DNA of 64,000 nucleotides from Zancudomyces culisetae HAW-14-8 (taxonomy: Eukaryota; Fungi; Kickxellomycota): NCBI GenBank assembly GCA_052426225.1, contig JBNJNM010000012.1:2460971-2524970 (forward strand), read 5' to 3'. This document shows, in pieces, positions 14,123 through 49,849 of this stretch. The notes below the pieces were generated by a model. It worked only from the letters and a program-made list of their open reading frames with translations, was not told where the DNA came from and made no database searches. The position numbers were made by a program, and so were the translations under genes. Numbering within the stretch: position 1 is the stretch's first letter; the number at the start of each line of letters is the position of its first letter.

Positions 14123-15133
14123 ATGGATCTGAAGAGCCTTATTTCTTTGCTGCTCTTTCAACTTTTTGTGGTAAATGGGGATCAGCAAGTAAAAAGAGAT
14201 AACTCCAGTGAATCAATCAGTAAATTCGACTTGACGTCCAACCAGCGGGTTGTTAATGGAGTGCCAGCCCTTATAAACGAGTTTCCCTACGCCGTTTTCA
14301 TATATATCGACTTGGGAAGTTCAGGCGAGGTTTGTACAGGATCATTAATCTCTGACTCTGTGGTTGTTACCGCAGCACACTGTCTATTAAAAGACTTGAA
14401 AGAGCCTTATTCACCATCAAAATTTCTTGTCAGCGCGGGAAGTATAAAAAGCATTGATACGAATACAAACAGATTCAAAGTAAAAGCAACATATTCTCAC
14501 CCAAAGTTTAATAAAAATTCTCTAGCGAATGACATTGGTTTACTTGTACTTTCATCACCCGTTCCCAGCAGTATTGCGACTCCAGTTTCAATTTATGACG
14601 ACGTTGTGGGGGATGGGATGAACGTTACTGCTGCGGGTTGGGGAGTTACTTCAAACAACGCCAATGCCAGCGCATCCAAGGTTTTAAATAAGGTTCCCCT
14701 CATTGTTTCCTCTTCTAGTACGTGTAAGACGCTTAACCCATTTTGGAAAAATAATAACGACTACAGTATATGTACAGTAAATGTTAAAAACCAGGATACG
14801 TGTTACGGAGATTCAGGTGGGCCACTGACATACATAGAAGACGGTGCTCATTTACTAGTTGGTCTGACAAGTATGGGGAATGCACCTGGAGATGATACAA
14901 CATCCTCGTTATGTGGAGTGAATGGCGGCGCAGCTTATTACACACACGTGTTTTATTTTATTGACTGGATATCCCAGACAACAGGGATCAAAAAGGAGGA
15001 TCTTTTGGATAAAACATCACGATCTAACCTTCAACCGCAGACTTCTGCTGCGACTCGGAAAGGATCACAAGTTTTCTTGCCTATTTCGTTCTCTTTATTA
15101 TTCATTGCTTTTACTTTACTGCTATTTATGTAG
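14123..15133 (+). CDS. Secreted, probably GPI-anchored trypsin-like serine protease (S1A)
   Basis: Signal peptide; activation site R-VVNG; triad motifs TAAHC, DIGLL, GDSGGP; Asp189 in QDTCYGDSGG; Ser/Thr spacer and hydrophobic C-terminal tail (VFLPISFSLLFIAFTLLLFM). Confidence 0.92.
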   Translation: MDLKSLISLLLFQLFVVNGDQQVKRDNSSESISKFDLTSNQRVVNGVPALINEFPYAVFIYIDLGSSGEVCTGSLISDSVVVTAAHCLLKDLKEPYSPSKFLVSAGSIKSIDTNTNRFKVKATYSHPKFNKNSLANDIGLLVLSSPVPSSIATPVSIYDDVVGDGMNVTAAGWGVTSNNANASASKVLNKVPLIVSSSSTCKTLNPFWKNNNDYSICTVNVKNQDTCYGDSGGPLTYIEDGAHLLVGLTSMGNAPGDDTTSSLCGVNGGAAYYTHVFYFIDWISQTTGIKKEDLLDKTSRSNLQPQTSAATRKGSQVFLPISFSLLFIAFTLLLFM

Positions 15134-15235: not shown

Positions 15236-18200
15236 CTATTTAGCCACTGAAAGAGCTACAACTTGCATACAGTCAAAGACAATGTTCAGCTCTATCGTGT
15301 TGATTCCAATACGCTCAACCAGTTCTGCCAACTTGTTATAAAATTTTACAGAAGCAGCTATATAGGTGTCATCGCTGGCTATGTCCTCAATCTCAATGTC
15401 AATTAGAGGCGCTGCAGCTCCTTTACTCCAAAGTTCCACATTGGAACCGTGTTGATCATTAAAACTTGTTATAGCTTTTATTGTTGCTTCTTTTGCGCAC
15501 CATAGCATTGTAAAGCCTGATGCGATAGAGGATTGAGTCTTGCAATACTCTATTTCCTTTTTAGTAAAGTTTCGGGTGATAAAGTTTTCATTTTCCACAT
15601 TTAGCGAGGATACTGGTTCAATATCAATACCAATACCACATATCTGCTTTTTATCAATGTTCTTTATAATTTTATCAAGTGCAAGAACTGTATTATTTAT
15701 AATCAAGTCATTGATAGATCCAGACTCGGGTTCGGTTATCTGGTCAAATCTGTTGAACGAATAAGTCTCAGATACCGGGTCAAACGAAACTCTAGCATTG
15801 GGATTCATATATACTAGCTCTTCCATTTCCTTGGAAAACGGAGGATCGGACTTTATTTTGACATGCTTTTTGAGCCCAGTTAAAGTGTTTTGGTAATATC
15901 TGTTAGCTTTGATCTGCCTTTGATTCCGTTTTTTCAAATATGACGCGTATTCGTGTCTATCTAGTGATGCTAGCAGATAATCTGGATGCACAACAATCAT
16001 TTCACCGCAATCTTTAGACTTTCCATATGATCTTAATATTCCTGCCTTAACCATGGGTCTCTTGTAGGATTCGTATGGGAAAAAAGTAAAGGTGTAGTCT
16101 TTATAATCGTTGGAAATGTTGTCAGAAATTCTATTCCCAGGAATGATCCCAGTGTTAATAGATTGGATAAGCCCAGTCAGCTCGATAACTGAAGATGCGC
16201 TTTTTGTGTGTCCAATAAGCCCCTTTTGTGAAACAACGGGGCAAATATTGCCAGGTGTTCTTCCCAAATAGTTAAACTGAATATCTGCTATTTTTAGCTC
16301 CATATGGTCCATACGACTTATTGAACTCGAATACATGCTAACAACATCGATATCATTAATATCCAACCCAAAACAAGATAGAGCCCCTCTAATAGGAGAA
16401 ATGGTTTTATCACTTCTCCAAAACTCATTTGTCCAGAAGCTTATTGCCTCTTTTCTTAATCTGTTTTCTTGATTTGATATGCTATTGATAACTTCTGTAA
16501 TCAAATCCAGCTTACTTTGTGAGGTATTGCTGCTCAAAAATAAATCTCTGTCAGATACGAGACCATTTGATCCAAAATTATCAGTTTGGAAATATTCATC
16601 AAATCCCGTAGATGTAATGTAAGAGTACTCTTCGGTTGCCCATTTTTTGATCTCCAAAAGTCTTTTTTCTAGCTGGTCTTTCCGATAGCTGATATCTAAA
16701 ATAGGGTTGGGCATATTTGTAATGGGATCACATTCACGAGAATTGGATAGTACTCCGTACCCAACATATTCCCTATAGGTAGCATAACTTGATGTGTTGG
16801 TCTGGCAAAAGGCAATTATTGCATATATTGGCACACCCATTTCTAGTGCAGTCCTGGCAGACATTAGAACCATAGTTGATGAGCCGATACTTTCAACAAA
16901 ACCATCGCTAGTATTTGTAAATGGCCGAAAATGATCTTTTACAGTTCTTCCCGCCTTTTGTTCTTTAGATGCCGTCACTAGCTCTTTATTAAGGAAAAGT
17001 TCGAGGTTCATTTCCTCGTCTACATCATCTTGACCCCCAGCAATCATCACCTTTGCCTTGCCCATCTGAATACTCTCAACAGCAATCGAAACAGATGCTA
17101 ATCCATTGGAATAGGATGTGCTTGGAATTTTTATAGGCCCGGCGGACGACAATAGCAGCAAGTTTATCCATCCCGACATTGATGAGGGAAATGTCTCTTG
17201 TAATATATCCTTTTGTACATCTTCGTCTCTTAGTCTCCCCAGACATGTTTCTAAAAATGACTCAACACCACCCACAAATGAGCCCACCGAATTTCCAACT
17301 TCAGTTAGATGTACGTATTTGTAGAATTCGTATGGATCCTCAATTCCAGCCCGCATTAACGAATCACATGTGGAAACTAGGGTCAGGAGAGTCAAATAAT
17401 CTACTTGGTTAATGGTATCTGTGTCTATCCCATATCTTTTTGCCGACCATCCCTTTGGAAGTAATCCTACAGTGTTAGAGTCGATTTTAGTTGCCTTGGG
17501 AAAGTACAGTTTTGCTCCGGGCAAGAACTGTACAGACCACGTTTCGTCACCATTGCTCCAAATCTTTACCTTATCTTCATTTCGCAGTTTAAAGTGTTCG
17601 GCTTCCACCTGTGTCGTAATTATCGGATGCATTTTTTCTTGGATTTCGATTTCCTGTATAGTGACTCGTTCATCTGGATTGTATCCACGCATTAACTCTG
17701 GGTCAATGTTTCTTATTCTGGAGTTTTGAACAATCTTCATCTCATAAATACTCCTAATTCTTTTCTCTTCAATTGGTTGTTTGGTTTCACAGTCTATCCA
17801 TCCATTATAATAGCGACCATCCTTTTGCTTTCCGTTGAAATATTCTATATATCCCATGATCCAAGCCAAGACAATGCAGCTTTCTGTAGATAAGTTTTCG
17901 TCAACTTCAAAATCCCATCTAGTTTCTGCAGTACCGTACGGAGTAACTTCACCATATCCAACTAAAACCACTGTTTTGTCCAGATCCAGCATATTCTTCA
18001 TGTAGTTTAGATTTTCAAGCTCATCATACGTTTTGGTTTTAGGAAATTCCAGCCAAAGCTTAGACTGTGGGATAGCTTGGGTGGTTTTATATAGACGTTC
18101 CACGTTTTCTCCCTCAATCATATTGAAATCAAATGAGGTTTCCGCAACAATTTTCTTTTGCAACGAGCTCTGAAACATTAAGTTGTTTCTAATCTTAACG

Positions 18201-21200
18201 CATCTATCATTAAAGTCCATCATAATCCCGAACCCACCGCTAATGTCAACATACATGGGGCCGCTGTTTGATACTTGTGACAATCGCGGATGCAAGAGAC
18301 CCATCACGTTAAGTGCAATCTCATCAGGCGAAAACGTCTTTCCTCCTTGTTTCTCCATTTCTTCCGCAACAATATCATTTTGGTTCATCAGTGATGTACC
18401 TCTTGCCCAACCCACAACTACACCAATTATATTTATGATTCCGCCCCATGATTCAGCTCTCCACTTATCAAATAACGTTTCAAGTCCGATTTTACTTTCG
18501 GCGTACAGACCATCGTATCCAAAGCCACCATGATTTAGTGATAATGGTACCACTACTCTGGTAGGTCTGAAAACACTATTTAGCTCGTTCTTATTCTTTA
18601 CAATTCTGCCAACCATCCTTATAATATTGATAAGCATTGTACGATGACTCAATTCCGAGTAGGAATCTATGCAAGTGATATCCCTATTTATTTCTGACAT
18701 CGCTGCAAACGGGATAAATAGATCCAAATCTAACCCAAGCCCTCCACTTGCCTTTGGTTTGTAAATAAAATCAACCAAGTTGTTAATATCAGTTTGTGAA
18801 GATTGATTAAACGGAACAACAGTTAGTGAAGATTTTTTAGACCCATGCTCCTTATAAACCTTTTCATACATCCTTATATTATCGTATTTGAAATTCGATG
18901 TTGTCGCAATGACGTTTGCACCAGATACTAGTAATGCCTTTACAAGAGATAAACCTATAGAATTCTTCCCACAACCTGTAACCAAAACGTTCTTACCACT
19001 ATATGAAATACCATGTTTTGAAATATCCAATATAGCAGCCATATACACTGAAGTCGAATCAGGGTCATAGTTCCATATTTCATGTGAAAACCTGGTTCGA
19101 AGGTGAAGAAACGGAATTCTGTCTTTTATGAGAATTTGTTTGGAAAATTGTTGAAAATCGTCAAACTCTCTCATATCTTTTTCAAGTTGACTAGTTTTAT
19201 CGGACTGATCAGTGTGTGCTTCCCTTTTTCTAGTTGCCAGTTCTGACAGCAAGGCTGAAATTCTATTAAGGTCCAATGTCTTTTCACCACCACCACTATT
19301 ACTATTTATAAAATCAAAAATTTCTTCAACCTTTAAGCCACTCGATATATCACTATCTTGGGTTCGACTAGCCAGATTAGGTATGCCCTTTACCATTGAT
19401 TTCAAATAATCAACACAGCTATTTACTCCGGCTCTTGGAGTTTCTGTATATTGAATTTCCCCCTTGTTGCTAACAGTTGTCCTTGGACCCACAAATTTCT
19501 CCAAACCCTTATACAATGGATCTAATTCAACATTTGCCTCGCAAACATTTACTAGATCCCTCAATAGCTCAATCTTTGCTGCCAACTCCTTATTTTCATG
19601 GGTTAGACTGTTTTCTTGTTTTAATATCTGCAATTTGTATTTTAAAAAGCCAACCAACTGAATGCTAGAACAGTTTACAAGATGTCTGAACTCGTCCATT
19701 AGAGTTTCCTTTATTTTTTCGCTATTCATTTCCACCATTCTATAGAAAAGCGAGTCTGCCCGTGCCAAAGACCAGTTCCAGTATGAGTCAAAGACTCTAA
19801 CTTTTTCTTCCTCAAAAATCGATTTTATTCCTTCAATAAACACCTCTCCCTGCTCACTAAGTAAATAATCAATCTGAGCTTGAACTTCACCCAGTTTGTT
19901 TGTTGTTTCCTCCAACGCTTCGTGGCTCTTGCTATAGCTTACACCGAAATAATCGTTCAAAGATTCAAGATGAGAATTCAATAATGTATCTTGCTTTTCC
20001 ACTAGACTGGTGAATTCTTTTGAATTTATTACTGTGGTACTTTTTCCTGCACTAGAAGACACACTTAGTTGAGAATATTGTATTCCAAATATTTTAGCAT
20101 ATTGATTGGCAACTATTTCCAACCACGAATTCATGTCCTTTTCATTTGCCAATCGGTTTTCAGGCTCAAATGTAGTTCCCAGCAAAAGCAAACAGTCAGC
20201 ACGCAATGGACCTAGTCCGTACTTTTTGTTTAGCATTTCCTTGATCTTGGGAATGGTAAATCCACCCGGCATCTTTGAGTTTACCAACTTTGACACCCTT
20301 ACAGATGAAAATGGTCCCAGTCCGCCAGAAGAGTTATTAAGTTGGCCAAAAAGCTCAATCAGTGGCATTTCCTCAGCCTTATCAGGTAGTTGATTTTGAA
20401 ACTCCTTTTGTAAATCACTGATTATTTCATTTTGCATTGCTGATTTGCCATTGACTAGGTCCTTAATAGATTTGGAATCGGAAATATCAATGTAACTTTT
20501 TTTCAGCTTTTGAGCAACTATAGAGGTAATGATTTCACGAGCTGTGATTTTTACATCTTCTATTTGTGCAGCTACTCCTTGAGATCTATGCCCATCGCCA
20601 GAACTGTTTTCGAGAGCAGGGCTGTAATGTAGATCAGCTGGTGTTGCTGTTGGTATTTCAGCTGGTTTGGTGACTTGTTCACTTGAACGAGACGTTGAAG
20701 TCTGTGTGTCTGCAGCTTCACTTTGTTTGTCGGTAGAGAGCTTTTTACTGGATATTGGAAGAGAGGCGTTTGATTCTTGAGGTTCGTTGGATTCATTTTG
20801 TCTGTTGGCGTGATAAATGAATTCTTTATCGCTAATACAATGTAGTATAGTACGCTGGATTCCCTCCAAATCGTCTTGATCCTTGAACTTGGCATGTATC
20901 GTTCTTGTTGCCATTCCAACCAACACGGAACTGGGCCCGACCTCAATAGCTTGTTCAATATTACAGTCTCCGAATATGGTATTTTGAGTTTCAATCCATT
21001 GAACAGGGCTGGCAAATTGATATGACAACAGTTCAACCAAAAGAATGTGGCCCAGTCGTTGTTTCTCATGTCGATCAGCCAAATGTGATTCGTCCCAATG
21101 ATCAATGACCTCTCTGAGGTGCGGTGAATGGATAGCACTGTAGACCATTTCAAAGTATGCTTTCGATACAGCAAACATCTTTCCTGTTACATTTGGAATA

Positions 21201-24200
21201 TATCTACGTTCTAGCTGTTCAACTACTACATTTTCCTTTGTGATTGATTTGTGTAGGAATTGTCGCATCAGTGGTACCCCCGACAATAGAAAAGAGGAAT
21301 GGAATGGCACATCAATCCCAGGAATAGGAATGGTACATTTGCTTCGAGTTAGGGATATATACCCATTGCTAGCATTGTACTTTTTATCAGATTTAGCAAT
21401 TATTTGGCAAATTGTCTTTTCTACAAATGCACTAAATTCTTGCATCATTTCTGTATCAACTATATCTTCAGACTCGGTATCATGACTTTTCTTAAATATA
21501 CCATTTAATTGTTCTTTCTGGTAAAATAGGACATCTGTTACCTGGGAAAATATGTCCAGTAATACCAGTTCACCAGCAATCACATACTGCCAGTTATAAA
21601 TGTTGTAGTTTACAATCTCCATTAAACCAGGTCTTTTTTCTTTGATCATATCAACAACCTTTTCAAACATCATTTCCATGAATTTTGAAGCTATTCGGCT
21701 TGGGTTGAAGGCAACCATTCCGTACTTACTGGCTCCCTCCTTATTGCGTTCTACAGATAACTGCATGGCCAATCCGCGATAAAACACCAGTTCAATCATT
21801 GTTTCTACTTTTACCATTCCACCCATAACCAACAATGCGCAGAATTCTCCAAGTGAATGGCCAGCAAATACAAGATCTTTGTGCACAAGGTTGTTGTTCA
21901 ACATATCCTGCGATGCCGCCATTGCAAAAAGCATAATTGAGGGCTGGGTAAACTGTGTTGCATTGAGAAGACCTGTTGGCGACCTGAATGTATAGCTTTC
22001 ACTGCGCTCGTTGATTTCTGGAAAAATACTTATATACTCGGATTCGCCCTGTTTATTGGTTATTTCGTATCTCATATTTATATACCTGGTTCTAATTTCC
22101 TTACCCCTTGAACCCCCAAAATATATAGTCTTTTCGCTTGGGTTCAGTCTGATTATCTCCAACAACGAGAATCCATATAGATCGTCCATATACTTGTCAA
22201 CCGAATTCCAGATTTCTTTCACAGCTTCCGAGCCGTTGTACAGATCCACACCCATATTAACCACTTGCGAACCTTGCCCCGTAAACAGGTAAGCTGTTTT
22301 TGGTGGATTTATTTCTGCAACACCCTCCAGTACTTTGTTGCCAATGCTGGTGAATGTTTCAATTTTGATTATTTTTCGTCCATTGCGCATGCCTACATGT
22401 GTTAATTTGGTTTCTAAGGTGTCTCCTGGTAAGACCATGTCCAAAAAGTTCACTTCGTACACTGCTACTCGTTCTGGATGGCCCTCTGCAGCGCATGTTT
22501 CCACAACTCTTCTGGTCGCAGCTGAAGTCCACATTCCATGAACAATTGTTCCAGGAAGTCCACTAAGATTGGCAAAGAAGATGTTTGTGTGAATAGGATT
22601 GAGATCGGCTGTAACCAGTGCGAATTCCTTATTTGAAATCCGAGTGTGGCTGATTGCCAAATGTCTCAAATCTTTAGGAATTGCTGAATATCCTCCATCT
22701 TCAAAATATTGTGGTTCGTCAAACGGCTCTCCGTTTCGCTCTAGATATGCCAGTACAGGATTACCATATGCATGTCCGCTTTCATAATCTACACATCCAA
22801 CCTCAACAGGAAGGGTGTTTTGAGATAAGACCTCGACCGATCCAACGGTTTTTACGCTGCTAAACTCCTTGATGCCTTTATATCTCACACTACTAACCAA
22901 ATTAAAGACAAGTACTGAACCAACTTGAACCAACCGATCATAGTTTTCTCCGGCTATTAACCATTCTTTACTTTGCAACACCTTCAAATCCTCTTCTGTG
23001 TTTAGCGATATTTTTGCCTTGGTTTCGTCTTTTATGCTAAAAGTATTTTGGTAGTCATTGAATTTACCTCTGAACAGCGAGCTTGTAACAACTTTGTAAT
23101 GGGGTACTCCGTCTTTCATTAAAATTCCCTCGGAGGTTGTCATCTTCCCCATTGGGCTGTTTGTAACTGATAGTAATCTTGCAGTAGCACTTAAATTATC
23201 GCTGGTTTTGAGCAGTTGGTAATCACAAAGTGATTCCAGTTTTACCGAGTAGTGTACAATGTCAAGCATGTTTGCATCTGCGCAATTGTGTGATGCAGTA
23301 CAAATTGCTCCCCACAGAATACTGAATACAAAATCCATCGGAATATATGAATAGCCTTCTATGTTGTTGTATACATACTGATGCGATATATTATCCACCA
23401 CTTGACAGAACTTGGCTACATCTTTTGGGCTAACAATAACACTATTTTGAATCACAGTTCTTTCTCCAGTCTCGTCAACGTGCATGGTATATTGCTCCGG
23501 ATGATGCACCCATAGCTGTTTATAAAATTCGCTCACCCGTGAATTCCTCTCGTTTACAATTTCATGAATTAGAGCGTATGGGGTCTCTGGTTTATATGAA
23601 AACTTGAAAAAAACACTATAAGTATTAGCGTTTGGCTTGTCGTTCATAGTGATTGTGATTGTTTTATCCTTACATTCATACAATATCTTTATACTTTTGA
23701 AATGATGTTCATTTTCAACACACAGCTCCGTAGGATATCCACTATCATCAAAGTGTATCGTGGTTGTGGTTTTGGGAATAGGGGCTAGTGTAGATCTAAT
23801 ATTATTTTCTGTAACGTCTTCTCCCCTAACTATTGACCGCGAAAAGAGCAAAGCAGACAGCCACGACTGCTTGCCACCACAAAAAACGCTATACCACTCG
23901 TCACTTGTAGGCAAACGATCTGTATCATCCTGAAGTAGTTTAAATGTCTTTTTATTTGCCATCGAAACACACTCAATCGTGCCCGGAAGAGTTTTAGTTG
24001 TGTTTACACCAATCTCAACTGAGTATTCGATCTCAGGTACTCTGGTTTCATCACCTTCGTACATTGTATCCAAAAGAGAACGAATGTGACTTTGATTGAT
24101 ACCATTCAAGATATCAGAAACTGGTTCATCAACCACGTTTGCATACGAAACGGCCACTGGTCCCTGTAAAATGCATACTTTCTGTGCATCTTGACCCACT

Positions 24201-27200
24201 ACAGAGTCCAAATATTCTGACTGCCACAAACTGTCCTTTTTAAACCAGGAATCAAGGTTTTCATCCAAAATGGGAATGAATGGTACTGGCTTTCTGCCAG
24301 GTTCTTGACATATGTTTAAGAAAAAATGAGAGTCTATCACTGATATTGCTGTTTTAGATGCGTTTGGATGCATCTCCAATATAGTATTTACAATCTCAGT
24401 TGGTTGAGAGAGTTGTGCACTTGATTGCAGTATCATTTCATGTGGTATATAGCTAAATCTCTCTTCTATTTTTCTTAAAAAGTCTGCTACTATTTCTGTA
24501 TATGAGGAATGAATCCATTTATCATTTTTCTGATCAAACATCAAATCAACCATCCTAAATATAACTTCTGAGTATGTCATCTCTTCCAAATCGCACACAT
24601 CTCCGTTTTCTTTACGTCCAAACCAAGGCCTTTGATAATCCTTATTGAGCCGCCCAATGATATACTCCTTTTTCTGCTTTAAAATCTTTTTTCTCTCCTC
24701 GACAGGCAGACTAAAGATGGTTTTATCAAGCTCATCCCAGAGCATCACCGCTCTATTAGCAATCATATGGATTGGCTGGCCGAGTTCAGAAATCACAGAG
24801 ATGATCCCACCAGCTGGTCCATTATATGTGTCTGCCCACTTTATATCCGGAACACCGGGTGTGTCCACTATCAACTGTTTCACTTTATAACTTGTAGGAC
24901 ATTCTTTTGCAACCATCATCCTCGACCCAAGAAGAATACCATCAAATGGCATTCTAGGTCTTTCATAAGCCATACTCCAGTCACCAGTAATATACGGCAA
25001 TGTGTCTTTATCGCCACCAAACCCTGATCCCGCGACCAAAACAACGTTTTCGCACATCCTAATCTCGGCATATGTTTCTAAAATTGGCTGGTGGAAATCT
25101 TCGGAGCTATGGTGCCCACCGCCACGCCCGCCTGTCCACTGAAGAATAATATTCATTTTGGGGTTATTTTTAGCCACTAAAACAACCTGCCTTATAGATT
25201 CAGCATTGCCTGGTTTAAAAGAAATATGCTTTATTCCGCATTGAATCATTCCTTCAATTAATTCGGTTGATGTTTCCAAACTAGGAACACCTGCCGAAAT
25301 ACAAACTCCATCGATTGGAGCACCCTCGAGTCTCATTCTGTTTAGCAGCGGTAGCTGAAGACTTGCCATTCTTGCGTTCAAGAAAATTACATTTACTGTG
25401 ATCCCATCACCTGGTCCAATGTTTCTTCGTATTTTTTCAACCTCCTCTCGTAGTGATGCCTCAGAATAATGACCTCCACCAGCAAGCTCAATATGATAGC
25501 CAGAATTAAGAACAGACGATACAAAATCAGACCCAATAGTCGATGGTGTCATACCAGCAACCATGATATGGGGCTTTCCTAGAAGTCGTGTCATGCGTGT
25601 GTCAAGCATAAGGCTTCCGGTGTACTTATTTTGCACTATTTTTGGTCCAAACTCCTTTTCCCAGTTTTGACTATATGTCACAGAATTAGGATCGTTGTTT
25701 AACAAATCTACAAGCGTTTTTGTACCTTCAGGTATGATTTTATTGGGACTTGCAAAAATGACTTGAACACCAGTGCCCAGTTTGTTGTTTGCGGTCAATG
25801 AGCCAATTCCTGAAATTCCACCAGGACCAAAGTCAACAATGTGTGTAATGTCTTTTAACTCTGTTGCCTTAATCCAATTTACTTGTTCAATACATATCTC
25901 GTTGATAAGTATATATGTTAAATCTTTATCTTTGGTATCGTACATGGACCCGCATACAGATTTTACTGGAATATTCATAAATTTGCTTTGAAATAGAAAT
26001 CCTTCCGTTTTTATTCTACGATGTATTTGGTCGATATGCTTCCTCATCAAATTGCTGTGTAGCGGATTAGGATTCTGTATATACTCGAATTTAATTTCAT
26101 CAGTCAAGTTTACACAATTTTTATTTTTTAGGTTCGAGATATGAGATTTAGAGAATTCTTTGAGCTTGAGAACAAACAAACGCAAAATATGATCAGGACC
26201 TGTAAGCTGACACACACTATTTGATTTAATAAACGAAACGCATACTCTTTCGTCTGGGTCAAGATCTTTGTTGACCTGGTTAACTATTGTGTTTAGCGAT
26301 TTTATTGGAATATTCATAACTTCTAATTGTATAGTCGGCATACCAGAAGGGTTTGTAGTTGTACGACTTTTAACGGAATCTCTGCTGCTGTGGATAGAGT
26401 TTTCAATATCAGCGTGGAGTCCCACGTAGTATAAAAAACCCAAGGCGTTTTTCGAGTTGTGAATGAAGCTATTATGATCGTTGGAACATGATATAGCTAC
26501 AGCCACTACGGTACCACAGCCAAATCCTGCTAGACTATCGAATCTTCTTGTAACCCAACTATGACTTCTTTTCGATACTCTACAAACCAGGTAGTATAAT
26601 GACAGACTTACAAGACCCGAAAGTATCATACTCGCCGCTATTGAATGTTGAAAACCAAGTTCTTCAAAGGTTTGACATTCCTTTTTTTTCAAAAGATCTA
26701 AAATATTGATTCTGAACTTTGCCAGGCCTTTTTTATATTCATCGCTTGAAATTCCAAGTACGAGCTCCGAAAGAGTTGTTACATAGTCGTTTAATAGCGA
26801 ATTATAAGTCCCTAGCAAATTTTCTAGCACTTGTAAACTCACATCGGGTGAGATATATCCATCAAATATCCCTGCTAGTTTTAGTTTTTTTTTTATTGAA
26901 AGCTCGAAAATCGCACTCAAGTGCTCATCGCTTTTTTCTGGTTGTATATTTTCCTTGACTGTAGCACTTTCTATAATGTCAACACAAGTAAAGTAGCTAT
27001 TTAGAATGTTCTTTCTAGAATTATCGTCGACTTTGCTGACAGCAACATGAATATCGTTGTTATTCAAATATTCATTATCAATAACATCAAGCAAGAACCG
27101 AAGTACTCCTATCTGTTCGGGTTCAATATTGGCTTTATCGATCGAGTGAAGGTTAATATAATGGTGTATGAATTTAGTAACTAAGTCGAGCTGAACAATT

Positions 27201-27337
27201 TTGGAGCTTTTATTCTCTACTAATATTGCTGGGTCTATACTTGGTTCAAAACTTCCTGATGTGTGCTTTAAAGTTGCCTCATATTCCTGTGGAACGGATA
27301 GTGTACACAAATCTTTATACAGGTAGACTTTGCTCAT
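15236..27337 (-). CDS. Single-chain fungal type I fatty acid synthase (AT-ER-DH-MPT-ACP-KR-KS-PPT) with degenerate AT and KS active sites, ~4033 aa
   Basis: Likely ATG at 27337 (the track start at 27418 is TTG). Intact motifs: ER LQWTGGRGGGHHS, DH ADLNPIH/HGMW, MPT FTGQGSQ/GHSLG/VPFHS, ACP GKSAMQNE, KR VTGCGKNSIG/YAESK, PPT GIDIE/WCAKEA. Degenerate: KS PSTSYS (for PVGACA) and SMYSSS (for SFHGTS); AT GFGCG (for GHSQG). Confidence 0.95.
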   Translation of the reverse strand: MSKVYLYKDLCTLSVPQEYEATLKHTSGSFEPSIDPAILVENKSSKIVQLDLVTKFIHHYINLHSIDKANIEPEQIGVLRFLLDVIDNEYLNNNDIHVAVSKVDDNSRKNILNSYFTCVDIIESATVKENIQPEKSDEHLSAIFELSIKKKLKLAGIFDGYISPDVSLQVLENLLGTYNSLLNDYVTTLSELVLGISSDEYKKGLAKFRINILDLLKKKECQTFEELGFQHSIAASMILSGLVSLSLYYLVCRVSKRSHSWVTRRFDSLAGFGCGTVVAVAISCSNDHNSFIHNSKNALGFLYYVGLHADIENSIHSSRDSVKSRTTTNPSGMPTIQLEVMNIPIKSLNTIVNQVNKDLDPDERVCVSFIKSNSVCQLTGPDHILRLFVLKLKEFSKSHISNLKNKNCVNLTDEIKFEYIQNPNPLHSNLMRKHIDQIHRRIKTEGFLFQSKFMNIPVKSVCGSMYDTKDKDLTYILINEICIEQVNWIKATELKDITHIVDFGPGGISGIGSLTANNKLGTGVQVIFASPNKIIPEGTKTLVDLLNNDPNSVTYSQNWEKEFGPKIVQNKYTGSLMLDTRMTRLLGKPHIMVAGMTPSTIGSDFVSSVLNSGYHIELAGGGHYSEASLREEVEKIRRNIGPGDGITVNVIFLNARMASLQLPLLNRMRLEGAPIDGVCISAGVPSLETSTELIEGMIQCGIKHISFKPGNAESIRQVVLVAKNNPKMNIILQWTGGRGGGHHSSEDFHQPILETYAEIRMCENVVLVAGSGFGGDKDTLPYITGDWSMAYERPRMPFDGILLGSRMMVAKECPTSYKVKQLIVDTPGVPDIKWADTYNGPAGGIISVISELGQPIHMIANRAVMLWDELDKTIFSLPVEERKKILKQKKEYIIGRLNKDYQRPWFGRKENGDVCDLEEMTYSEVIFRMVDLMFDQKNDKWIHSSYTEIVADFLRKIEERFSYIPHEMILQSSAQLSQPTEIVNTILEMHPNASKTAISVIDSHFFLNICQEPGRKPVPFIPILDENLDSWFKKDSLWQSEYLDSVVGQDAQKVCILQGPVAVSYANVVDEPVSDILNGINQSHIRSLLDTMYEGDETRVPEIEYSVEIGVNTTKTLPGTIECVSMANKKTFKLLQDDTDRLPTSDEWYSVFCGGKQSWLSALLFSRSIVRGEDVTENNIRSTLAPIPKTTTTIHFDDSGYPTELCVENEHHFKSIKILYECKDKTITITMNDKPNANTYSVFFKFSYKPETPYALIHEIVNERNSRVSEFYKQLWVHHPEQYTMHVDETGERTVIQNSVIVSPKDVAKFCQVVDNISHQYVYNNIEGYSYIPMDFVFSILWGAICTASHNCADANMLDIVHYSVKLESLCDYQLLKTSDNLSATARLLSVTNSPMGKMTTSEGILMKDGVPHYKVVTSSLFRGKFNDYQNTFSIKDETKAKISLNTEEDLKVLQSKEWLIAGENYDRLVQVGSVLVFNLVSSVRYKGIKEFSSVKTVGSVEVLSQNTLPVEVGCVDYESGHAYGNPVLAYLERNGEPFDEPQYFEDGGYSAIPKDLRHLAISHTRISNKEFALVTADLNPIHTNIFFANLSGLPGTIVHGMWTSAATRRVVETCAAEGHPERVAVYEVNFLDMVLPGDTLETKLTHVGMRNGRKIIKIETFTSIGNKVLEGVAEINPPKTAYLFTGQGSQVVNMGVDLYNGSEAVKEIWNSVDKYMDDLYGFSLLEIIRLNPSEKTIYFGGSRGKEIRTRYINMRYEITNKQGESEYISIFPEINERSESYTFRSPTGLLNATQFTQPSIMLFAMAASQDMLNNNLVHKDLVFAGHSLGEFCALLVMGGMVKVETMIELVFYRGLAMQLSVERNKEGASKYGMVAFNPSRIASKFMEMMFEKVVDMIKEKRPGLMEIVNYNIYNWQYVIAGELVLLDIFSQVTDVLFYQKEQLNGIFKKSHDTESEDIVDTEMMQEFSAFVEKTICQIIAKSDKKYNASNGYISLTRSKCTIPIPGIDVPFHSSFLLSGVPLMRQFLHKSITKENVVVEQLERRYIPNVTGKMFAVSKAYFEMVYSAIHSPHLREVIDHWDESHLADRHEKQRLGHILLVELLSYQFASPVQWIETQNTIFGDCNIEQAIEVGPSSVLVGMATRTIHAKFKDQDDLEGIQRTILHCISDKEFIYHANRQNESNEPQESNASLPISSKKLSTDKQSEAADTQTSTSRSSEQVTKPAEIPTATPADLHYSPALENSSGDGHRSQGVAAQIEDVKITAREIITSIVAQKLKKSYIDISDSKSIKDLVNGKSAMQNEIISDLQKEFQNQLPDKAEEMPLIELFGQLNNSSGGLGPFSSVRVSKLVNSKMPGGFTIPKIKEMLNKKYGLGPLRADCLLLLGTTFEPENRLANEKDMNSWLEIVANQYAKIFGIQYSQLSVSSSAGKSTTVINSKEFTSLVEKQDTLLNSHLESLNDYFGVSYSKSHEALEETTNKLGEVQAQIDYLLSEQGEVFIEGIKSIFEEEKVRVFDSYWNWSLARADSLFYRMVEMNSEKIKETLMDEFRHLVNCSSIQLVGFLKYKLQILKQENSLTHENKELAAKIELLRDLVNVCEANVELDPLYKGLEKFVGPRTTVSNKGEIQYTETPRAGVNSCVDYLKSMVKGIPNLASRTQDSDISSGLKVEEIFDFINSNSGGGEKTLDLNRISALLSELATRKREAHTDQSDKTSQLEKDMREFDDFQQFSKQILIKDRIPFLHLRTRFSHEIWNYDPDSTSVYMAAILDISKHGISYSGKNVLVTGCGKNSIGLSLVKALLVSGANVIATTSNFKYDNIRMYEKVYKEHGSKKSSLTVVPFNQSSQTDINNLVDFIYKPKASGGLGLDLDLFIPFAAMSEINRDITCIDSYSELSHRTMLINIIRMVGRIVKNKNELNSVFRPTRVVVPLSLNHGGFGYDGLYAESKIGLETLFDKWRAESWGGIINIIGVVVGWARGTSLMNQNDIVAEEMEKQGGKTFSPDEIALNVMGLLHPRLSQVSNSGPMYVDISGGFGIMMDFNDRCVKIRNNLMFQSSLQKKIVAETSFDFNMIEGENVERLYKTTQAIPQSKLWLEFPKTKTYDELENLNYMKNMLDLDKTVVLVGYGEVTPYGTAETRWDFEVDENLSTESCIVLAWIMGYIEYFNGKQKDGRYYNGWIDCETKQPIEEKRIRSIYEMKIVQNSRIRNIDPELMRGYNPDERVTIQEIEIQEKMHPIITTQVEAEHFKLRNEDKVKIWSNGDETWSVQFLPGAKLYFPKATKIDSNTVGLLPKGWSAKRYGIDTDTINQVDYLTLLTLVSTCDSLMRAGIEDPYEFYKYVHLTEVGNSVGSFVGGVESFLETCLGRLRDEDVQKDILQETFPSSMSGWINLLLLSSAGPIKIPSTSYSNGLASVSIAVESIQMGKAKVMIAGGQDDVDEEMNLELFLNKELVTASKEQKAGRTVKDHFRPFTNTSDGFVESIGSSTMVLMSARTALEMGVPIYAIIAFCQTNTSSYATYREYVGYGVLSNSRECDPITNMPNPILDISYRKDQLEKRLLEIKKWATEEYSYITSTGFDEYFQTDNFGSNGLVSDRDLFLSSNTSQSKLDLITEVINSISNQENRLRKEAISFWTNEFWRSDKTISPIRGALSCFGLDINDIDVVSMYSSSISRMDHMELKIADIQFNYLGRTPGNICPVVSQKGLIGHTKSASSVIELTGLIQSINTGIIPGNRISDNISNDYKDYTFTFFPYESYKRPMVKAGILRSYGKSKDCGEMIVVHPDYLLASLDRHEYASYLKKRNQRQIKANRYYQNTLTGLKKHVKIKSDPPFSKEMEELVYMNPNARVSFDPVSETYSFNRFDQITEPESGSINDLIINNTVLALDKIIKNIDKKQICGIGIDIEPVSSLNVENENFITRNFTKKEIEYCKTQSSIASGFTMLWCAKEATIKAITSFNDQHGSNVELWSKGAAAPLIDIEIEDIASDDTYIAASVKFYNKLAELVERIGINTIELNIVFDCMQVVALSVAK

Positions 27338-36888: not shown

Positions 36889-39800
36889 CTAACTACATCC
36901 ACATGGCGGTCTGCGTATTGGCCTACATCCACATGGTGGTCTGCGTATTGGCCTACATCCACATGGTGGTCTGCGTATTGGCCTACACCCGCATGGTGGT
37001 CTGCGTATTGGCCTACATCCACATGGTGGTCTGCGTATTGGCCTACATCCACATGGTGGTCTGCGTATTGGCCTACACCCGCATGGTGTCGGTTTTGGTG
37101 TTGGTGTCGGTTTTGGTTTTGGTGTTGGTGTTGGTGTTGGTGTTGGTGTTGGTGTTGGTGTTGGTGTTGGTGTTGGTGTTGGTGTTGGTGTTGGTTTTGG
37201 TGTTGGTGGAATTGTTGACCAAGTTTTTGGTTTAGCTATTGAGCCACCAACTGGTGAACACGGCTGATATGGTGTTGGTTTTGGTGTTGGTTTTGGTGTT
37301 GGTTTTGATGTTGGTGTTGGTGTTGGTGTTGGTGTCGGTTTTGGTGTTGGTGTTGGTGTTGGTTTTGGTGTTGGTTTTGGTGTTGGTTTTGGTGTTGGTG
37401 TTGGTGTTGGTGGAATTGTTGACCAAGTTTTTGGTTTAGCTATTGAGCCACCAACTGGTGAACACGGCTGATATGGTGGTGGTGTTGGTGTTGGTTTTGA
37501 TGTTGGTTTTGGTGGAATTGTTGACCAAGTTTTTGGTTTAGCTATTGAGCCACCAACTGGTGAACACGGCTGATATGGTGTTGGTTTTGGTGTTGGTTTT
37601 GGTGTTGGTTTTGATGTTGGTGTTGGTGTTGGTGTTGGTGTCGGTTTTGGTGTTGGTGTTGGTGTTGGTTTTGGTGTTGGTTTTGGTGTTGGTGTTGGTG
37701 TTGGTGGAATTGTTGACCAAGTTTTTGGTTTAGCTATTGAGCCACCAACTGGTGAACACGGCTGATATGGTGGTGGTGTTGGTGTTGGTGTTGGTGTTGG
37801 TTTTGGTGTTGGTGTTGGTTTTGGTTTTGGTGGAATTGTTGACCAAGTTTTTGGTTTAGCTATTGAGCCACCAACTGGTGAACACGGCTGATATGGTGGT
37901 GGTTTTGGTGTTGGTTTTGGTGTTGGTTTTGGTGTTGGTGTTGGTGTTGGTGTTGGTGTTGGTGTTGGTTTTGGTGTTGGTGTTGGTTTTGGTGTTGGTG
38001 GAATTGTTGACCAAGTTTTTGGTTTAGCTATTGAGCCACCAACTGGTGAACACGGCTGATATGGTGGTGGTGTTGGTGTTGGTTTTGGTGTTGGTTTTGG
38101 TGTTGGTGTTGGTTTTGGTGTTGGTGGAATTGTTGACCAAGTTTTTGGTTTAGCTATTGAGCCACCAACTGGTGAACACGGCTGATATGGTGGTGGTGTT
38201 GGTGTTGGTGTTGGTGTTGGTTTTGGTGTTGGTGTTGGTGTTGGTGTTGGTTTTGGTGTTGGTGTTGGTTTTGGTGTTGGTGGAATTGTTGACCAAGTTT
38301 TTGGTTTAGCTATTGAGCCACCAACTGGTGAACACGGCTGATATGGTGGTGGTTTTGGTGTTGGTTTTGGTGTTGGTTTTGGTGTTGGTGTTGGTGTTGG
38401 TGTTGGTGTTGGTTTTGGTGGAATTGTTGACCAAGTTTTTGGTTTAGCTATTGAGCCACCAACTGGTGAACACGGCTGATATGGTGGTGGTTTTGGTGTT
38501 GGTTTTGGTGTTGGTTTTGGTGTTGGTGTTGGTGTTGGTGTTGGTTTTGGTGTTGGTGGAATTGTTGACCAAGTTTTTGGTTTAGCTATTGAGCCACCAA
38601 CTGGTGAACACGGCTGATATGGTGGTGGTTTTGGTGTTGGTTTTGGTGTTGGTTTTGGTGTTGGTTTTGGTGTTGGTTTTGGTGTTGGTGTTGGTTTTGG
38701 TGTTGGTGGAATTGTTGACCAAGTTTTTGGTTTAGCTATTGAGCCACCAACTGGTGAACACGGCTGATATGGTGGTGGTGGTGGTGTTGGTTTTGGTGTT
38801 GGTTTTGATGTTGGTTTTGATGTTGGTTTTGATGTTGGTGTTGGTGTTGGTTTTGGTGTTGGTTTTGGTGTTGGTTTTGGTGGAATTGTTGACCAAGTTT
38901 TTGGTTTAGCTATTGAGCCACCAACTGGTGAACACGGCTGATATGGTGGTGGTGTTGGTGTTGGTTTTGGTGTTGGTTTTGGTGTTGGTGTTGGTTTTGG
39001 TGTTGGTGGAATTGTTGACCAAGTTTTTGGTTTAGCTATTGAGCCACCAACTGGTGAACACGGCTGATATGGTGGTGGTGTTGGTGTTGGTGTTGGTGTT
39101 GGTTTTGGTGGAATTGTTGACCAAGTTTTTGGTATAGCTATTGAGCCACCAACTGGTGAACACGGCTGATATGGTGGTGGTGTTGGTGTTGGTGTTGGTG
39201 TTGGTTTTGATGTTGGTGTTGGTGTTGGTGTTGGTTTTGGTTTTGGTGTTGGTGTTGGTTTTGGTTTTGGTGTTGGTTTTGGTGTTGGTGGAATTGTTGA
39301 CCAAGTTTTTGGTTTAGCTATTGAGCCACCAACTGGTGAACACGGCTGATATGGTGGTGGTGTTGGTGTTGGTTTTGGTGTTGGTTTTGGTGTTGGTGTT
39401 GGTTTTGGTGTTGGTGGAATTGTTGACCAAGTTTTTGGTTTAGCTATTGAGCCACCAACTGGTGAACACGGCTGATATGGTGGTGGTGTTGGTGGTGGTG
39501 TTGGTGTTGGTTTTGGTGTTGGTTTTGATGTTGGTGTTGGTGTTGGTGTTGGTTTTGGTGTTGGTGTTGGTTTTGGTGTTGGTGTTGGTTTTGGTGTTGG
39601 TGGAATTGTTGACCAAGTTTTTGGTTTAGCTATTGAGCCACCAACTGGTGAACACGGCTGATATGGTGGTGGTTTTGGTGTTGGTGTTGGTGTTGGTGTT
39701 GGTTTTGGTGGAATTGTTGACCAAGTTGTTGGTTTAGCTATTGAGCCACCAACTGGTGAACACGGCTGATATGGTGGTGGAGGTGGTGGAGGTGGTGGCG

Positions 39801-40083
39801 GACATCGAGGTGGTGGAGGTGGTCGCCTACAACCACAACCCTTGAGGTCTACAGTTCCTAAATTATTACTTAGAATATGACTGTTGTTTAGATCTGCTTT
39901 ATCTTCGCTCTTCTTTTTGATTATTCTGTTGTGTTGTCTATTTGGGGATGCACTCAACCATCTATTCTTCAAAGTTAGAATAGAAAACTGCTGTGTTTTT
40001 TTCGTTTGCTTATCTACATAATTTTGCGAGTAAGCTGATACAGCTACAAGTGCTGAAAGATATACTATACAGATCTTAACCAT
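36889..40083 (-). CDS. Secreted extensin/glue-like Pro-Thr-Lys repeat protein with Cys-rich ends, 1064 aa
   Basis: ATG 40083 ([17 protein letters not shown] signal), GCGCRR-polyPro, 18 copies of [22 protein letters not shown] separated by (PT/PK)n, and C-terminal ([10 protein letters not shown])x6-CGCS; uninterrupted ORF. Confidence 0.88.
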
Positions 40084-48314: not shown

Positions 48315-49849
48315 TATCAAGGCTATGGCTCCAGGTACGTTAATCGATCTATGATTTATTTATTATTACTATTTTATTGCTAAAGATTCAAAAGCAATAA
48401 AATGATTAATATCTAAATAAATGAGTTTTGCATGAAAAGTTTTACAAAAAATTTTAGAAAAAATTTTTGAATAAAATTTAACCAATGAAATTCTTAAATT
48501 TTATTCATGGCATGATTGGTTCATGACATTACCCCAGCCTTAGAGCAGCCATATGTCTTAGCATGGCTTGTCAGGGTACTTAGCATGGAATTGTTTTATC
48601 AGTTTGGTAGCGTGGACATCAGTGAATCTTCCTAAGTACGATCTTCAGGACCATAGCCATCCCAATCAATCAGATACTTGAGTTTTCCCTTAACTATCTT
48701 TGAGTCTAGTATTTGACGAACTAAATACTCTTCTTGGTTGTTTACTATTAGTGGAGGGGGCTGAGGCTGTGATCTTAAAGTCTGAATTGATTCTTGAACT
48801 GGTTTAAGCAGTGATACATGGAAGACAGGATGAATCTTCATGGAAGGTGGCAGTGATAATCTTGCTGTAACAGGGTTGATTATTTCTGTGATAGTGTACG
48901 GCCCGCTATATTTGTAGTCTAACTTAGTTGATGGTCTTTGGCTTTGAATGTTTGTCTGTGATAGCCATACTTTAACTCCTGTTCTAAAATCACTCGTATC
49001 ACTTCTATTCTTGTCAGCATGTTTTTTGTAGCTTACTTTAGCTTTGGTTAATTGGATCTGTAGATTGTCTTGTATCATTTTTAGATGTTTTACAAATTCT
49101 TGGGCGCTTGGGACATTTGAAACTGTAGTTGTGTCAAGGTATAATTCGGGGTCATAACCATAGTTAGCTCGGAATGGGCTTATTCCTGTATATGCATGGA
49201 TCGCATTGTTATATGCGAATTCGGCCAGTGGCAGTAATTGAGACCAATCGTCTTGTTGGAAGTTAGTAAAACAACGATGGTATTGCTCCAATACTTGATT
49301 CACCCTTTACGTCTGACCGTCCAATTGAGGGTGGTATGCCGATGACAGATGAGACTTCATGTTTAGAAGTCGAAGTAGTTCCTTCCAAAACTTTGAAATA
49401 AACTGTGATCCTCGATCAGAGATAATACTTTTGGGCATTCCGTGAAGCTTGAAGATGTGATCTATGAATTTAGTGGCTGTCTCAATAGCTGTGGGTATAG
49501 CGCGGAGAGGAATAAAATGTGCCATTTTCGTTAGGCGGTCAACAACTACAAAAATGACTGTATGGTTCATTGATTTAGGCAGTTCAACTATAAAGTCCAT
49601 TGATATTAATTGCCATGGTCCCTTAGGTGTGTCTAGTGGCATGAGTAATCCACGGGGTTTGCACAAGCTATGCTTAGCCCTATTGCATGTATCGCAACTA
49701 TTAATATATTCTTGAACAAATCCTCTCATTTTAGGCCACCAGAATTTTCTTGAAATGAGGCCTTGGGTCTTGGAACGGCCAAAGTGGCCAGCTAGTGGTG
49801 CGTCGTGATACATATGCAAAACTTGAATACGGAGAGCATCTGGTACTTA
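48315..49849 (-). mobile_element. 3' fragment of a Ty3/gypsy chromovirus (integrase, chromodomain, PPT, 3' LTR 48315-48528)
   Basis: HHCC zinc finger (HDAPLAGH...CDTC), ISMDF, ISDRG, GQT*RVN (internal stop), GPY motif, chromodomain YLIDWDGYGPEDRT; PPT AAGGCTGGGGTAA beside an LTR end TCATGACA. Confidence 0.9.

What the first reader, a model, noticed from the sequence alone, without database searches (positions are those of the whole stretch)
15236..27337. Condensation-dead fatty acid synthase: intact 4000-aa megasynthase with selectively erased KS and AT sites
Seen: the KS catalytic Cys position is Tyr (IKIPSTSYSNG vs yeast Fas2 IKTPVGACATS; codon 17111-17113). The first catalytic His is Tyr (VSMYSSS vs ASFHGTS; 16331-16333), the SFGFG motif is SYGKS, and only the second His (GHTK, 16208-16210) remains. 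The AT nucleophile motif is GFGCG instead of GHSQG (26519-26521) and its FGGQG motif is FDGYI. In contrast ER (GGHHS), DH (DLNPIH, HGMW), MPT (GHSLG 21854, FYRG, PFHS), ACP Ser (GKSAM 20441), KR (YAESK 18503) and PPT (GIDIE, WCAKEA) are canonical, and the ORF has no stop in 12 kb. Known: Cys-His-His is required for condensation, and KSQ decarboxylases keep both His, so this is not a KSQ. Inference: priming and elongation were lost together while loading, carrier and reductive functions were kept. This fits a new role such as a reduction-only acyl-CoA tailoring barrel (KR-DH-ER on MPT-loaded host-derived acyl chains), a regulatory or structural subunit of mixed FAS hexamers, or a trans-acting PPTase scaffold.
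Basis: partly seen in the sequence, partly recalled or inferred. Interest (0 to 1): 0.9.

Follow-up and report, generated by a model that had tools for sequence, protein, structure and literature searches.

The report
Fatty acid synthase split between paralogs
In an insect-gut fungus, a duplicated giant fat-making enzyme has decayed into two copies that each lack what the other keeps, so they probably work only as a mixed complex.

Summary
Observation confirmed: an open 4033-aa single-chain fungal FAS (FAS-A, Zancudomyces culisetae, Harpellales) lacks KS Cys, the first KS His and AT Ser. The same KS residues occur in the second haplotype and an independent draft assembly. Paralog FAS-B (contig C11) has live AT and KS but a damaged PPT, and A's PPT is not canonical either. 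A keeps the Asp/Glu/Lys face and lost the Pro/Ser-His face; B shows the exact opposite. AcpS-type sites are built from these two faces on adjacent subunits, so only A:B contact should give a complete site. The ER-DH-MPT-ACP block is 99% identical between A and B (gene conversion) while flanks are synonymously saturated, so those intact motifs do not show a reduction-only role. Smittium mucronatum has a similar pair (KS-dead copy with PPT, KS-live copy without), probably of independent origin. Best model (~65%): obligate A:B heteromer in which B primes and condenses, and A is a CLF-like structural KS partner and half of the activating PPT. Co-assembly, expression and product are untested. The scan noted only this same stretch before.

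The parts
15236..27337 (-). FAS-A: single-chain fungal type I FAS paralog, 4033 aa, order AT-ER-DH-MPT-ACP-KR-KS-PPT
   Evidence: allele on C16; draft protein OMH83907.1
25898..26920 (-). Dead acetyl transferase domain (GGQ->DGY, GHSQG->GFGCG at 26519-26521); 19 of 37 conserved N/AT columns changed versus 7 in FAS-B
20069..25876 (-). ER-DH-MPT-ACP block (aa ~488-2423), 99% identical in DNA to FAS-B (gene-conversion tract), interrupted by an unconverted patch at about 24308-24640
   Evidence: both draft contigs break inside it
18008..19057 (-). KR domain, catalytic Tyr (18503-18505) and NADPH motif kept although outside the converted block; dN 0.34 versus dS about 3 against FAS-B
15968..18007 (-). 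Pseudo-KS domain: Cys->Tyr (17111-17113), His1->Tyr (16331-16333), FGFGQ->YGKSK; fold kept (model pLDDT 84.7, TM 0.91 to yeast FAS)
17189..17209 (-). DILQETF helix (yeast 1273-1279, F1279 lines the acyl channel): kept in both KS-dead copies, lost in both KS-live partners
   Evidence: PMC5353594
15239..15652 (-). Half-functional PPT: keeps Asp (15623-15625), Glu (15488-15490), Lys (15476-15478); lost Pro (15353-15355) and Ser-His (15275-15280). FAS-B shows the opposite pattern
   Evidence: face assignment from PMC3447402
62057..63999 (+). Telomere (GGGTTA x324): FAS-A is subtelomeric, as is FAS-B on C11, both with the 5' end toward the chromosome end; likely setting for ectopic conversion

Best explanation
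FAS-A is one half of a subfunctionalised pair. SHOWN: Harpellales have a second, divergent FAS clade; Furculomyces keeps it with all sites intact in one protein. In Z. culisetae it was duplicated long ago. A lost the AT and KS catalytic sites and the Ser-His/Pro face of PPT. B kept AT and KS but lost the Asp/Glu/Lys face of PPT and the DxxQxxF helix. The ER-DH-MPT-ACP block is nearly identical in the two, best explained by gene conversion. INFERRED: A and B pair through their KS domains. The heterodimer brings A's metal/catalytic PPT face against B's CoA-binding face, giving one composite site that loads phosphopantetheine on the ACPs. The pair is then built into mixed barrels (probably A3B3). 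B primes with acetyl and condenses; A's folded pseudo-KS completes B's acyl channel and the central wheel, much as CLF does for KS in type II PKS; ER, DH, KR and MPT are redundant. The product is a fatty acyl-CoA, possibly of non-standard length, made alongside the housekeeping FAS-C. The dependence may have arisen neutrally by reciprocal loss.
For: Genome holds A, B and canonical C. PPT: of 24 conserved columns A changed 6 and B 9; the non-conservative losses do not overlap. A keeps D/E/K and lost P/S/H, B the reverse; B is the only one of 176 scored PPTs with none of D/E/K. In V. cholerae AcpS, Asp8/Glu57/Lys61 come from one chain and Pro86/Ser111/Lys51 from the adjacent one (PMC3447402). 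Yeast PPT is active only as a multimer and the active species is organised by the KS dimer (PMC6972935). DxxQxxF is broken at two or more positions only in B (and its draft copy), its Smittium counterpart and 2 others of about 449; KS acyl channels include a partner helix (KasA alpha5', PMC9519891; Mtb FAS, PMC12720414). Smittium mucronatum pair: P0003 KS C->N, H->D, H->F with whole PPT, P0024 KS live with a genomic stop before PPT; dead copies share 23 lost KS columns against 7.6 expected, live copies 6 against 1.9. Synonymous sites saturated outside the block with the ORF still open; KS fold kept.
Against: No expression, proteomic or biochemical data; no sequencing run was listed. The PPT face assignment is transferred from bacterial AcpS by motif homology, not from a fungal dimer structure; disjointness of losses alone is only P=0.08. 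A few other fungal PPTs also vary at Pro or His. That yeast F1279 acts in trans is inferred by offset from the catalytic Cys; B's changes there could instead be new chain-length specificity. FAS-C and a candidate stand-alone PPTase could activate B in trans; many Coemansia FAS lack PPT altogether. In Smittium the PPT is not split, so there the dead copy need not co-assemble. Upstream regions of A and B share nothing above chance.
Confidence: 0.65

Rival explanations
1. Transient activator: A meets B only at the KS-PPT or PPT-trimer stage to activate B's ACP, and the two then form separate barrels (or A is degraded).
For: Reciprocal PPT faces need contact but not stable co-assembly; free yeast PPT is active as a trimer; the Smittium dead copy carries a whole PPT.
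Against: [quoted passage not shown]
Confidence: 0.13
2. Independent fates: B is activated by another PPTase (FAS-C or the stand-alone candidate), and A is a damper or dispensable subunit that dilutes KS sites, kept partly intact by gene conversion.
For: Other PPTases exist; PPT-less FAS are common in Kickxellales; conversion explains nearly half of A's intactness.
Against: Does not explain why B keeps exactly the PPT face that A lost and A the face that B lost; where PPT is dispensable it is simply deleted (P0024, Coemansia), whereas B keeps a folded domain.
Confidence: 0.13
3. One reading: A forms its own reduction-only barrel that loads acyl-CoA through MPT and runs KR-DH-ER on imported chains.
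For: KR, DH, ER, MPT and ACP motifs are intact; KR is conserved independently of conversion.
Against: ER-DH-MPT-ACP are near-identical to B, so there is no sign of a new specificity; an A homomer should lack a complete PPT site; the Smittium dead copy kept AT, so AT and KS loss are not coupled.
Confidence: 0.06
4. Young pseudogene or assembly chimera.
For: Allelic differences include many replacements (22 non-synonymous, 14 synonymous); no RNA evidence.
Against: Synonymous saturation against B (pS 0.74-0.82) with no stop in about 6.2 kb of unconverted sequence, where 0.05 random substitutions per site already gave stops in all 200 simulations; no replacement polymorphism in KR, KS or PPT; two haplotypes and an independent draft agree.
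Confidence: 0.03

Closest known systems
Single-chain fungal type I FAS (Mucoromycota/Zoopagomycota type; solved two-chain relatives 2UV8, 7BC4, 4V58)
   Same: Domain order, length, fold (TM 0.91 for KS), ER/DH/MPT/ACP/KR motifs.
   Different: AT and KS dead, PPT half dead; function appears to be spread over two full-length paralogs rather than one homo-oligomer.
KS-CLF heterodimer of type II polyketide synthases (actinorhodin, PDB 1TQY)
   Same: A catalytically dead KS paralog that has lost the GFGG gating loop (10.1101/644518; A has YGKS) beside a live KS; CLF shapes the partner's tunnel (own knowledge).
   Different: Here it is a domain inside a 4000-aa megasynthase, derived from a lineage-specific duplication; Cys->Tyr, not Gln; heterodimer and chain-length control are untested.
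Group II (Sfp-type) PPTases versus homo-oligomeric AcpS
   Same: Two AcpS-like domains each supply one face of one active site (PMC3447402).
   Different: In Sfp the halves are fused in one chain; here they sit on two separate megasynthase genes.
Interallelic complementation of yeast fas2 mutants (Schweizer laboratory; own knowledge, paper not read here)
   Same: Subunits defective in different sites make an active mixed complex.
   Different: Laboratory mutants; this would be a natural, fixed version.
PPT-less fungal FAS (Coemansia paralogs, Aspergillus secondary-metabolite FAS)
   Same: A FAS that depends on an outside PPT activity.
   Different: Those delete PPT; none was found with a KS-dead, full-length partner or split faces.

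Membership tests
Fungal type I FAS (self-sufficient enzyme) | Domain set and order AT-ER-DH-MPT-ACP-KR-KS-PPT | tested here: met
Fungal type I FAS (self-sufficient enzyme) | KS Cys-His-His | tested here: not met
   Tyr, Tyr, His
Fungal type I FAS (self-sufficient enzyme) | AT nucleophile GHSxG | tested here: not met
   GFGCG
Fungal type I FAS (self-sufficient enzyme) | PPT with both Asp/Glu/Lys and Pro/Ser-His faces | tested here: not met
   first face kept, second lost
Fungal type I FAS (self-sufficient enzyme) | ER, DH, MPT, ACP, KR motifs | tested here: met
   four of the five lie in the converted block
Fungal type I FAS (self-sufficient enzyme) | Assembly into a D3 barrel | not testable with these tools
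   KS monomer fold only
KSQ decarboxylase | Cys->Gln with both His kept | tested here: not met
   Cys->Tyr and His1->Tyr
CLF-like pseudo-KS | Dead KS with intact fold and a live paralog in the same genome | tested here: met
CLF-like pseudo-KS | Loss of the GFGG gating loop | tested here: met
   YGKSK; CLF comparison in 10.1101/644518
CLF-like pseudo-KS | Heterodimer with the live KS and control of chain length | not testable with these tools
   indirect only: reciprocal DxxQxxF pattern
Sfp-type (group II) PPTase | Two AcpS-like domains each keeping one face of the site | tested here: met
   A versus B residue pattern mapped on PMC3447402
Sfp-type (group II) PPTase | Both halves fused in one stand-alone chain | tested here: not met
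   halves on separate FAS genes on C12 and C11
Pseudogene | Stops, frameshifts, relaxed selection | tested here: not met

The most novel reading that the evidence does not exclude
A natural obligate heteromeric A3B3 fungal FAS with a split composite PPT site and KS/pseudo-KS dimers. If all KS and KR pairs are A:B, ring geometry puts A in one dome and B in the other, giving an asymmetric barrel with one synthesising and one non-priming chamber (speculative). It would make a Harpellales-specific lipid whose length is set by the dead partner, and a similar split would have evolved twice.
Probability: 0.3. Interest if true: 0.88.

Novelty: new variant of a known kind. Interest (0 to 1): 0.76.

Why it matters
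Fungal FAS barrels are known as symmetric assemblies of one sequence per position. A fixed pair of full-length paralogs with reciprocal active-site loss would be a large natural case of a homomer becoming an obligate heteromer, seen in two lineages, with an intact single-protein relative (Furculomyces) as control. The split PPT is a ready-made test of how FAS activates itself: it predicts that one site forms across the KS dimer. A pseudo-KS partner offers a natural handle on chain-length control and on building asymmetric barrels. It also warns that intact motifs inside a gene-conversion tract are not evidence of retained function. No description was found in the searchable literature, which omits most subscription journals.

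Tried and rejected
Sequencing-run search listed no run, so no reads were laid; expression and the FAS-C frameshift are untested. FAS-C was read through with X at the break for alignment only. Three protein searches and one representatives search found no further members of the divergent Harpellales clade beyond Z. culisetae, S. mucronatum, Furculomyces and S. angustum; length limits and fragmented drafts may hide more. Two other Cys-less KS hits (P0166, P0341) were not followed. The automatic flags were off by one column and were redone. Upstream regions of A and B share no motif above chance. No recent conversion between the Smittium copies. Single origin of the two KS-dead copies: rejected on KR+KS (AU p=2e-5) but not on KS alone (p=0.13), so independence is likely, not proven; the trees used selected subsets (12 to 27 rows). 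Three look-ups failed, including the cerulenin-FAS paper, so the trans role of F1279 is inferred. Rejected: KSQ, sequencing error, pseudogene, biosynthetic cluster (neighbours are a trypsin-like protease and housekeeping genes).

Full report
Observation. The window holds one stop-free ORF at 27337->15236 on the minus strand, 4033 aa, with the full domain set of a single-chain fungal fatty acid synthase. These positions are almost invariant: Cys 448/451, His1 435/436, His2 434/437 among homologues. They are not errors. An allelic haplotig (C16, 99.4% identical over 31 kb) has the same dead AT and KS residues, and OMH83907.1 from the independent draft GCA_001969505.1, which covers aa 2269-4033, has the same KS and PPT residues and identifies the organism as Zancudomyces culisetae, a Harpellales gut fungus. 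One correction: the PPT is only partly canonical.

Genome context. The genome encodes three FAS. FAS-A is the window gene. FAS-B (C11:5160888-5173082, minus strand, 4064 aa) has intact AT and KS. FAS-C (C21:1242921-1254904) is canonical at every motif and has a one-base frameshift just after the MPT PFHS motif, probably a long-read error, untested. Trees place A and B in a divergent Harpellales clade with the intact Furculomyces protein P0002 and two Smittium mucronatum proteins, apart from the canonical clade that holds C.

Gene conversion. A and B are 99-100% identical in DNA from about aa 488 to 2423 (ER-DH-MPT-ACP), apart from a patch near aa 900-1010, but only 23-60% identical in protein in AT, helical region, KR, KS and PPT. 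In the block pS is 0.016, close to the allelic 0.009; outside it synonymous sites are saturated (pS 0.74-0.82). The repeat is real: both draft contigs break inside it. Both genes are subtelomeric and face the chromosome end the same way, a setting that favours ectopic conversion (own knowledge). So the intact ER, DH, MPT and ACP motifs of A are not independent evidence of a reduction-only role. Outside the block about 6.2 kb has stayed open despite saturation, simulated neutral change of 0.05 per site already introduced stops in all 200 runs, and the alleles show no replacement in KR, KS or PPT. The KS fold is kept (pLDDT 84.7; TM 0.91 to yeast FAS). A is under selection and is not a pseudogene.

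The split PPT. Of 24 conserved PPT columns, A has changed Ser3941, Gly3944, Pro3995, Ser4020, His4021 and Ser4022. B has changed both Gly and the Asp of GxGxD, an Arg, the Trp, the catalytic Glu and the Lys. The non-conservative losses do not overlap. On its own that is weak (P=0.08), but it follows a partition given by structure. In V. cholerae AcpS, Asp8, Glu57 and Lys61 come from one chain and Lys51, Pro86, Ile110 and Ser111 from the adjacent chain; His103 is the neighbour of that Ser in B. anthracis (PMC3447402). A keeps 3/3 of the first set and 0/3 of Pro/Ser/His; B keeps 0/3 and 3/3, and is the only one of 176 scored PPTs with none of the first set. B's domain is still clearly a PPT. Yeast PPT works only as a multimer, and the active species is a dimer organised by the KS dimer (PMC6972935). 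By inference A:A and B:B give incomplete sites and A:B gives one complete site.

The KS pair. The helix DxxQxxF (yeast 1273-1279; F1279 protrudes into the acyl channel, PMC5353594) is canonical in A but changed at all three positions in B. Only two unrelated proteins among about 449 show a comparable change besides B and its Smittium counterpart. KS acyl channels include a helix from the partner subunit (KasA alpha5', PMC9519891; adjacent-protomer residues in Mtb FAS, PMC12720414). By offset from the catalytic Cys this is the same helix (inference). The simplest reading is that the dead subunit still supplies this helix to the live site, and that the live subunit's copy has relaxed because it faces a dead site. 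Altered specificity in B is an alternative.

A second case. S. mucronatum has P0003 (KS Cys->Asn, His->Asp, His->Phe; AT intact; whole PPT in the genomic ORF) and P0024 (KS live; genomic stop before PPT). The two dead copies share 23 lost KS columns against 7.6 expected, mostly with different replacements; the two live copies share the DxxQxxF loss. KR+KS trees group paralogs by species and reject a clade of the dead copies (p=2e-5). KS alone gives a best tree that separates them but does not reject that clade (p=0.13). Independent origin is likely, since Furculomyces, closer to Smittium, retains the unsplit state. AT loss is specific to Zancudomyces.

Mechanism. Shown: reciprocal losses, near-identity of the central block, selection, fold, a second pair. 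Inferred: A and B dimerise through KS; the composite PPT activates the ACPs; mixed barrels form; B primes and condenses; A serves as a structural, CLF-like partner with redundant KR, DH, ER, MPT and ACP; the product is an acyl-CoA that may differ from that of FAS-C. I give this 0.65. Rivals are transient activation without co-assembly (0.13), independent fates with activation by another PPTase (0.13; FAS-C and a stand-alone candidate exist), a reduction-only barrel (0.06) and pseudogene or artefact (0.03).

Comparison and novelty. A is homologous to fungal FAS but fails the tests for a self-sufficient one, and is not a KSQ. It works most like CLF in KS-CLF (including loss of the GFGG loop, 10.1101/644518) combined with the Sfp-type division of the AcpS site, but on two separate megasynthase genes. 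Searches of the held literature found no description. The scan's earlier notes cover only this same stretch and do not mention the partner. Verdict: real, a new variant of a known kind, interest 0.76. No reads could be laid, so expression is untested.

Noticed in passing
G000:C21 about 1249020 (locus L008): Canonical FAS-C has a one-base frameshift just after the MPT PFHS motif. Probably a long-read homopolymer error; if real, the A/B pair could be the only working FAS.
   Followed up: partly
window 62057-63999: Telomeric GGGTTA array with a proximal zone of GGGATA variant units; the right end of C11 is also telomeric.
   Followed up: partly
window 36889-40080 (-): Secreted-looking Pro/Thr/Lys-rich repeat protein (about 1060 aa, 36% Pro) with Cys-containing modules and C-terminal [10 protein letters not shown] repeats; no Pfam hit; repeat length differs in the C16 allele. 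Candidate wall, holdfast or appendage protein.
   Followed up: no
window 14123-15133 (+): Trypsin-family protease with signal peptide and hydrophobic C-terminal tail (possibly GPI-anchored), convergent with FAS-A across a 102-bp gap.
   Followed up: no
window 48632-49819, 56904-57431, 60142-60933 (-): Fragments of Ty3/Gypsy-like retroelements (integrase- and gag-like ORFs) in the subtelomere.
   Followed up: no
window 24308-24640 (-): A patch of about 110 codons in the ER helical region escapes A/B homogenisation (pS 0.52), flanked by 99% identical DNA; it may hold paralog-specific contacts.
   Followed up: partly
P0007-P0119 (Coemansia, Kickxella): Kickxellales carry many FAS paralogs, and those seen here, canonical ones included, lack the PPT domain.
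   Followed up: no
L023 (G000:C7:908557-908706): Stand-alone ACPS-family PPTase candidate, spliced; a possible trans activator.
   Followed up: no
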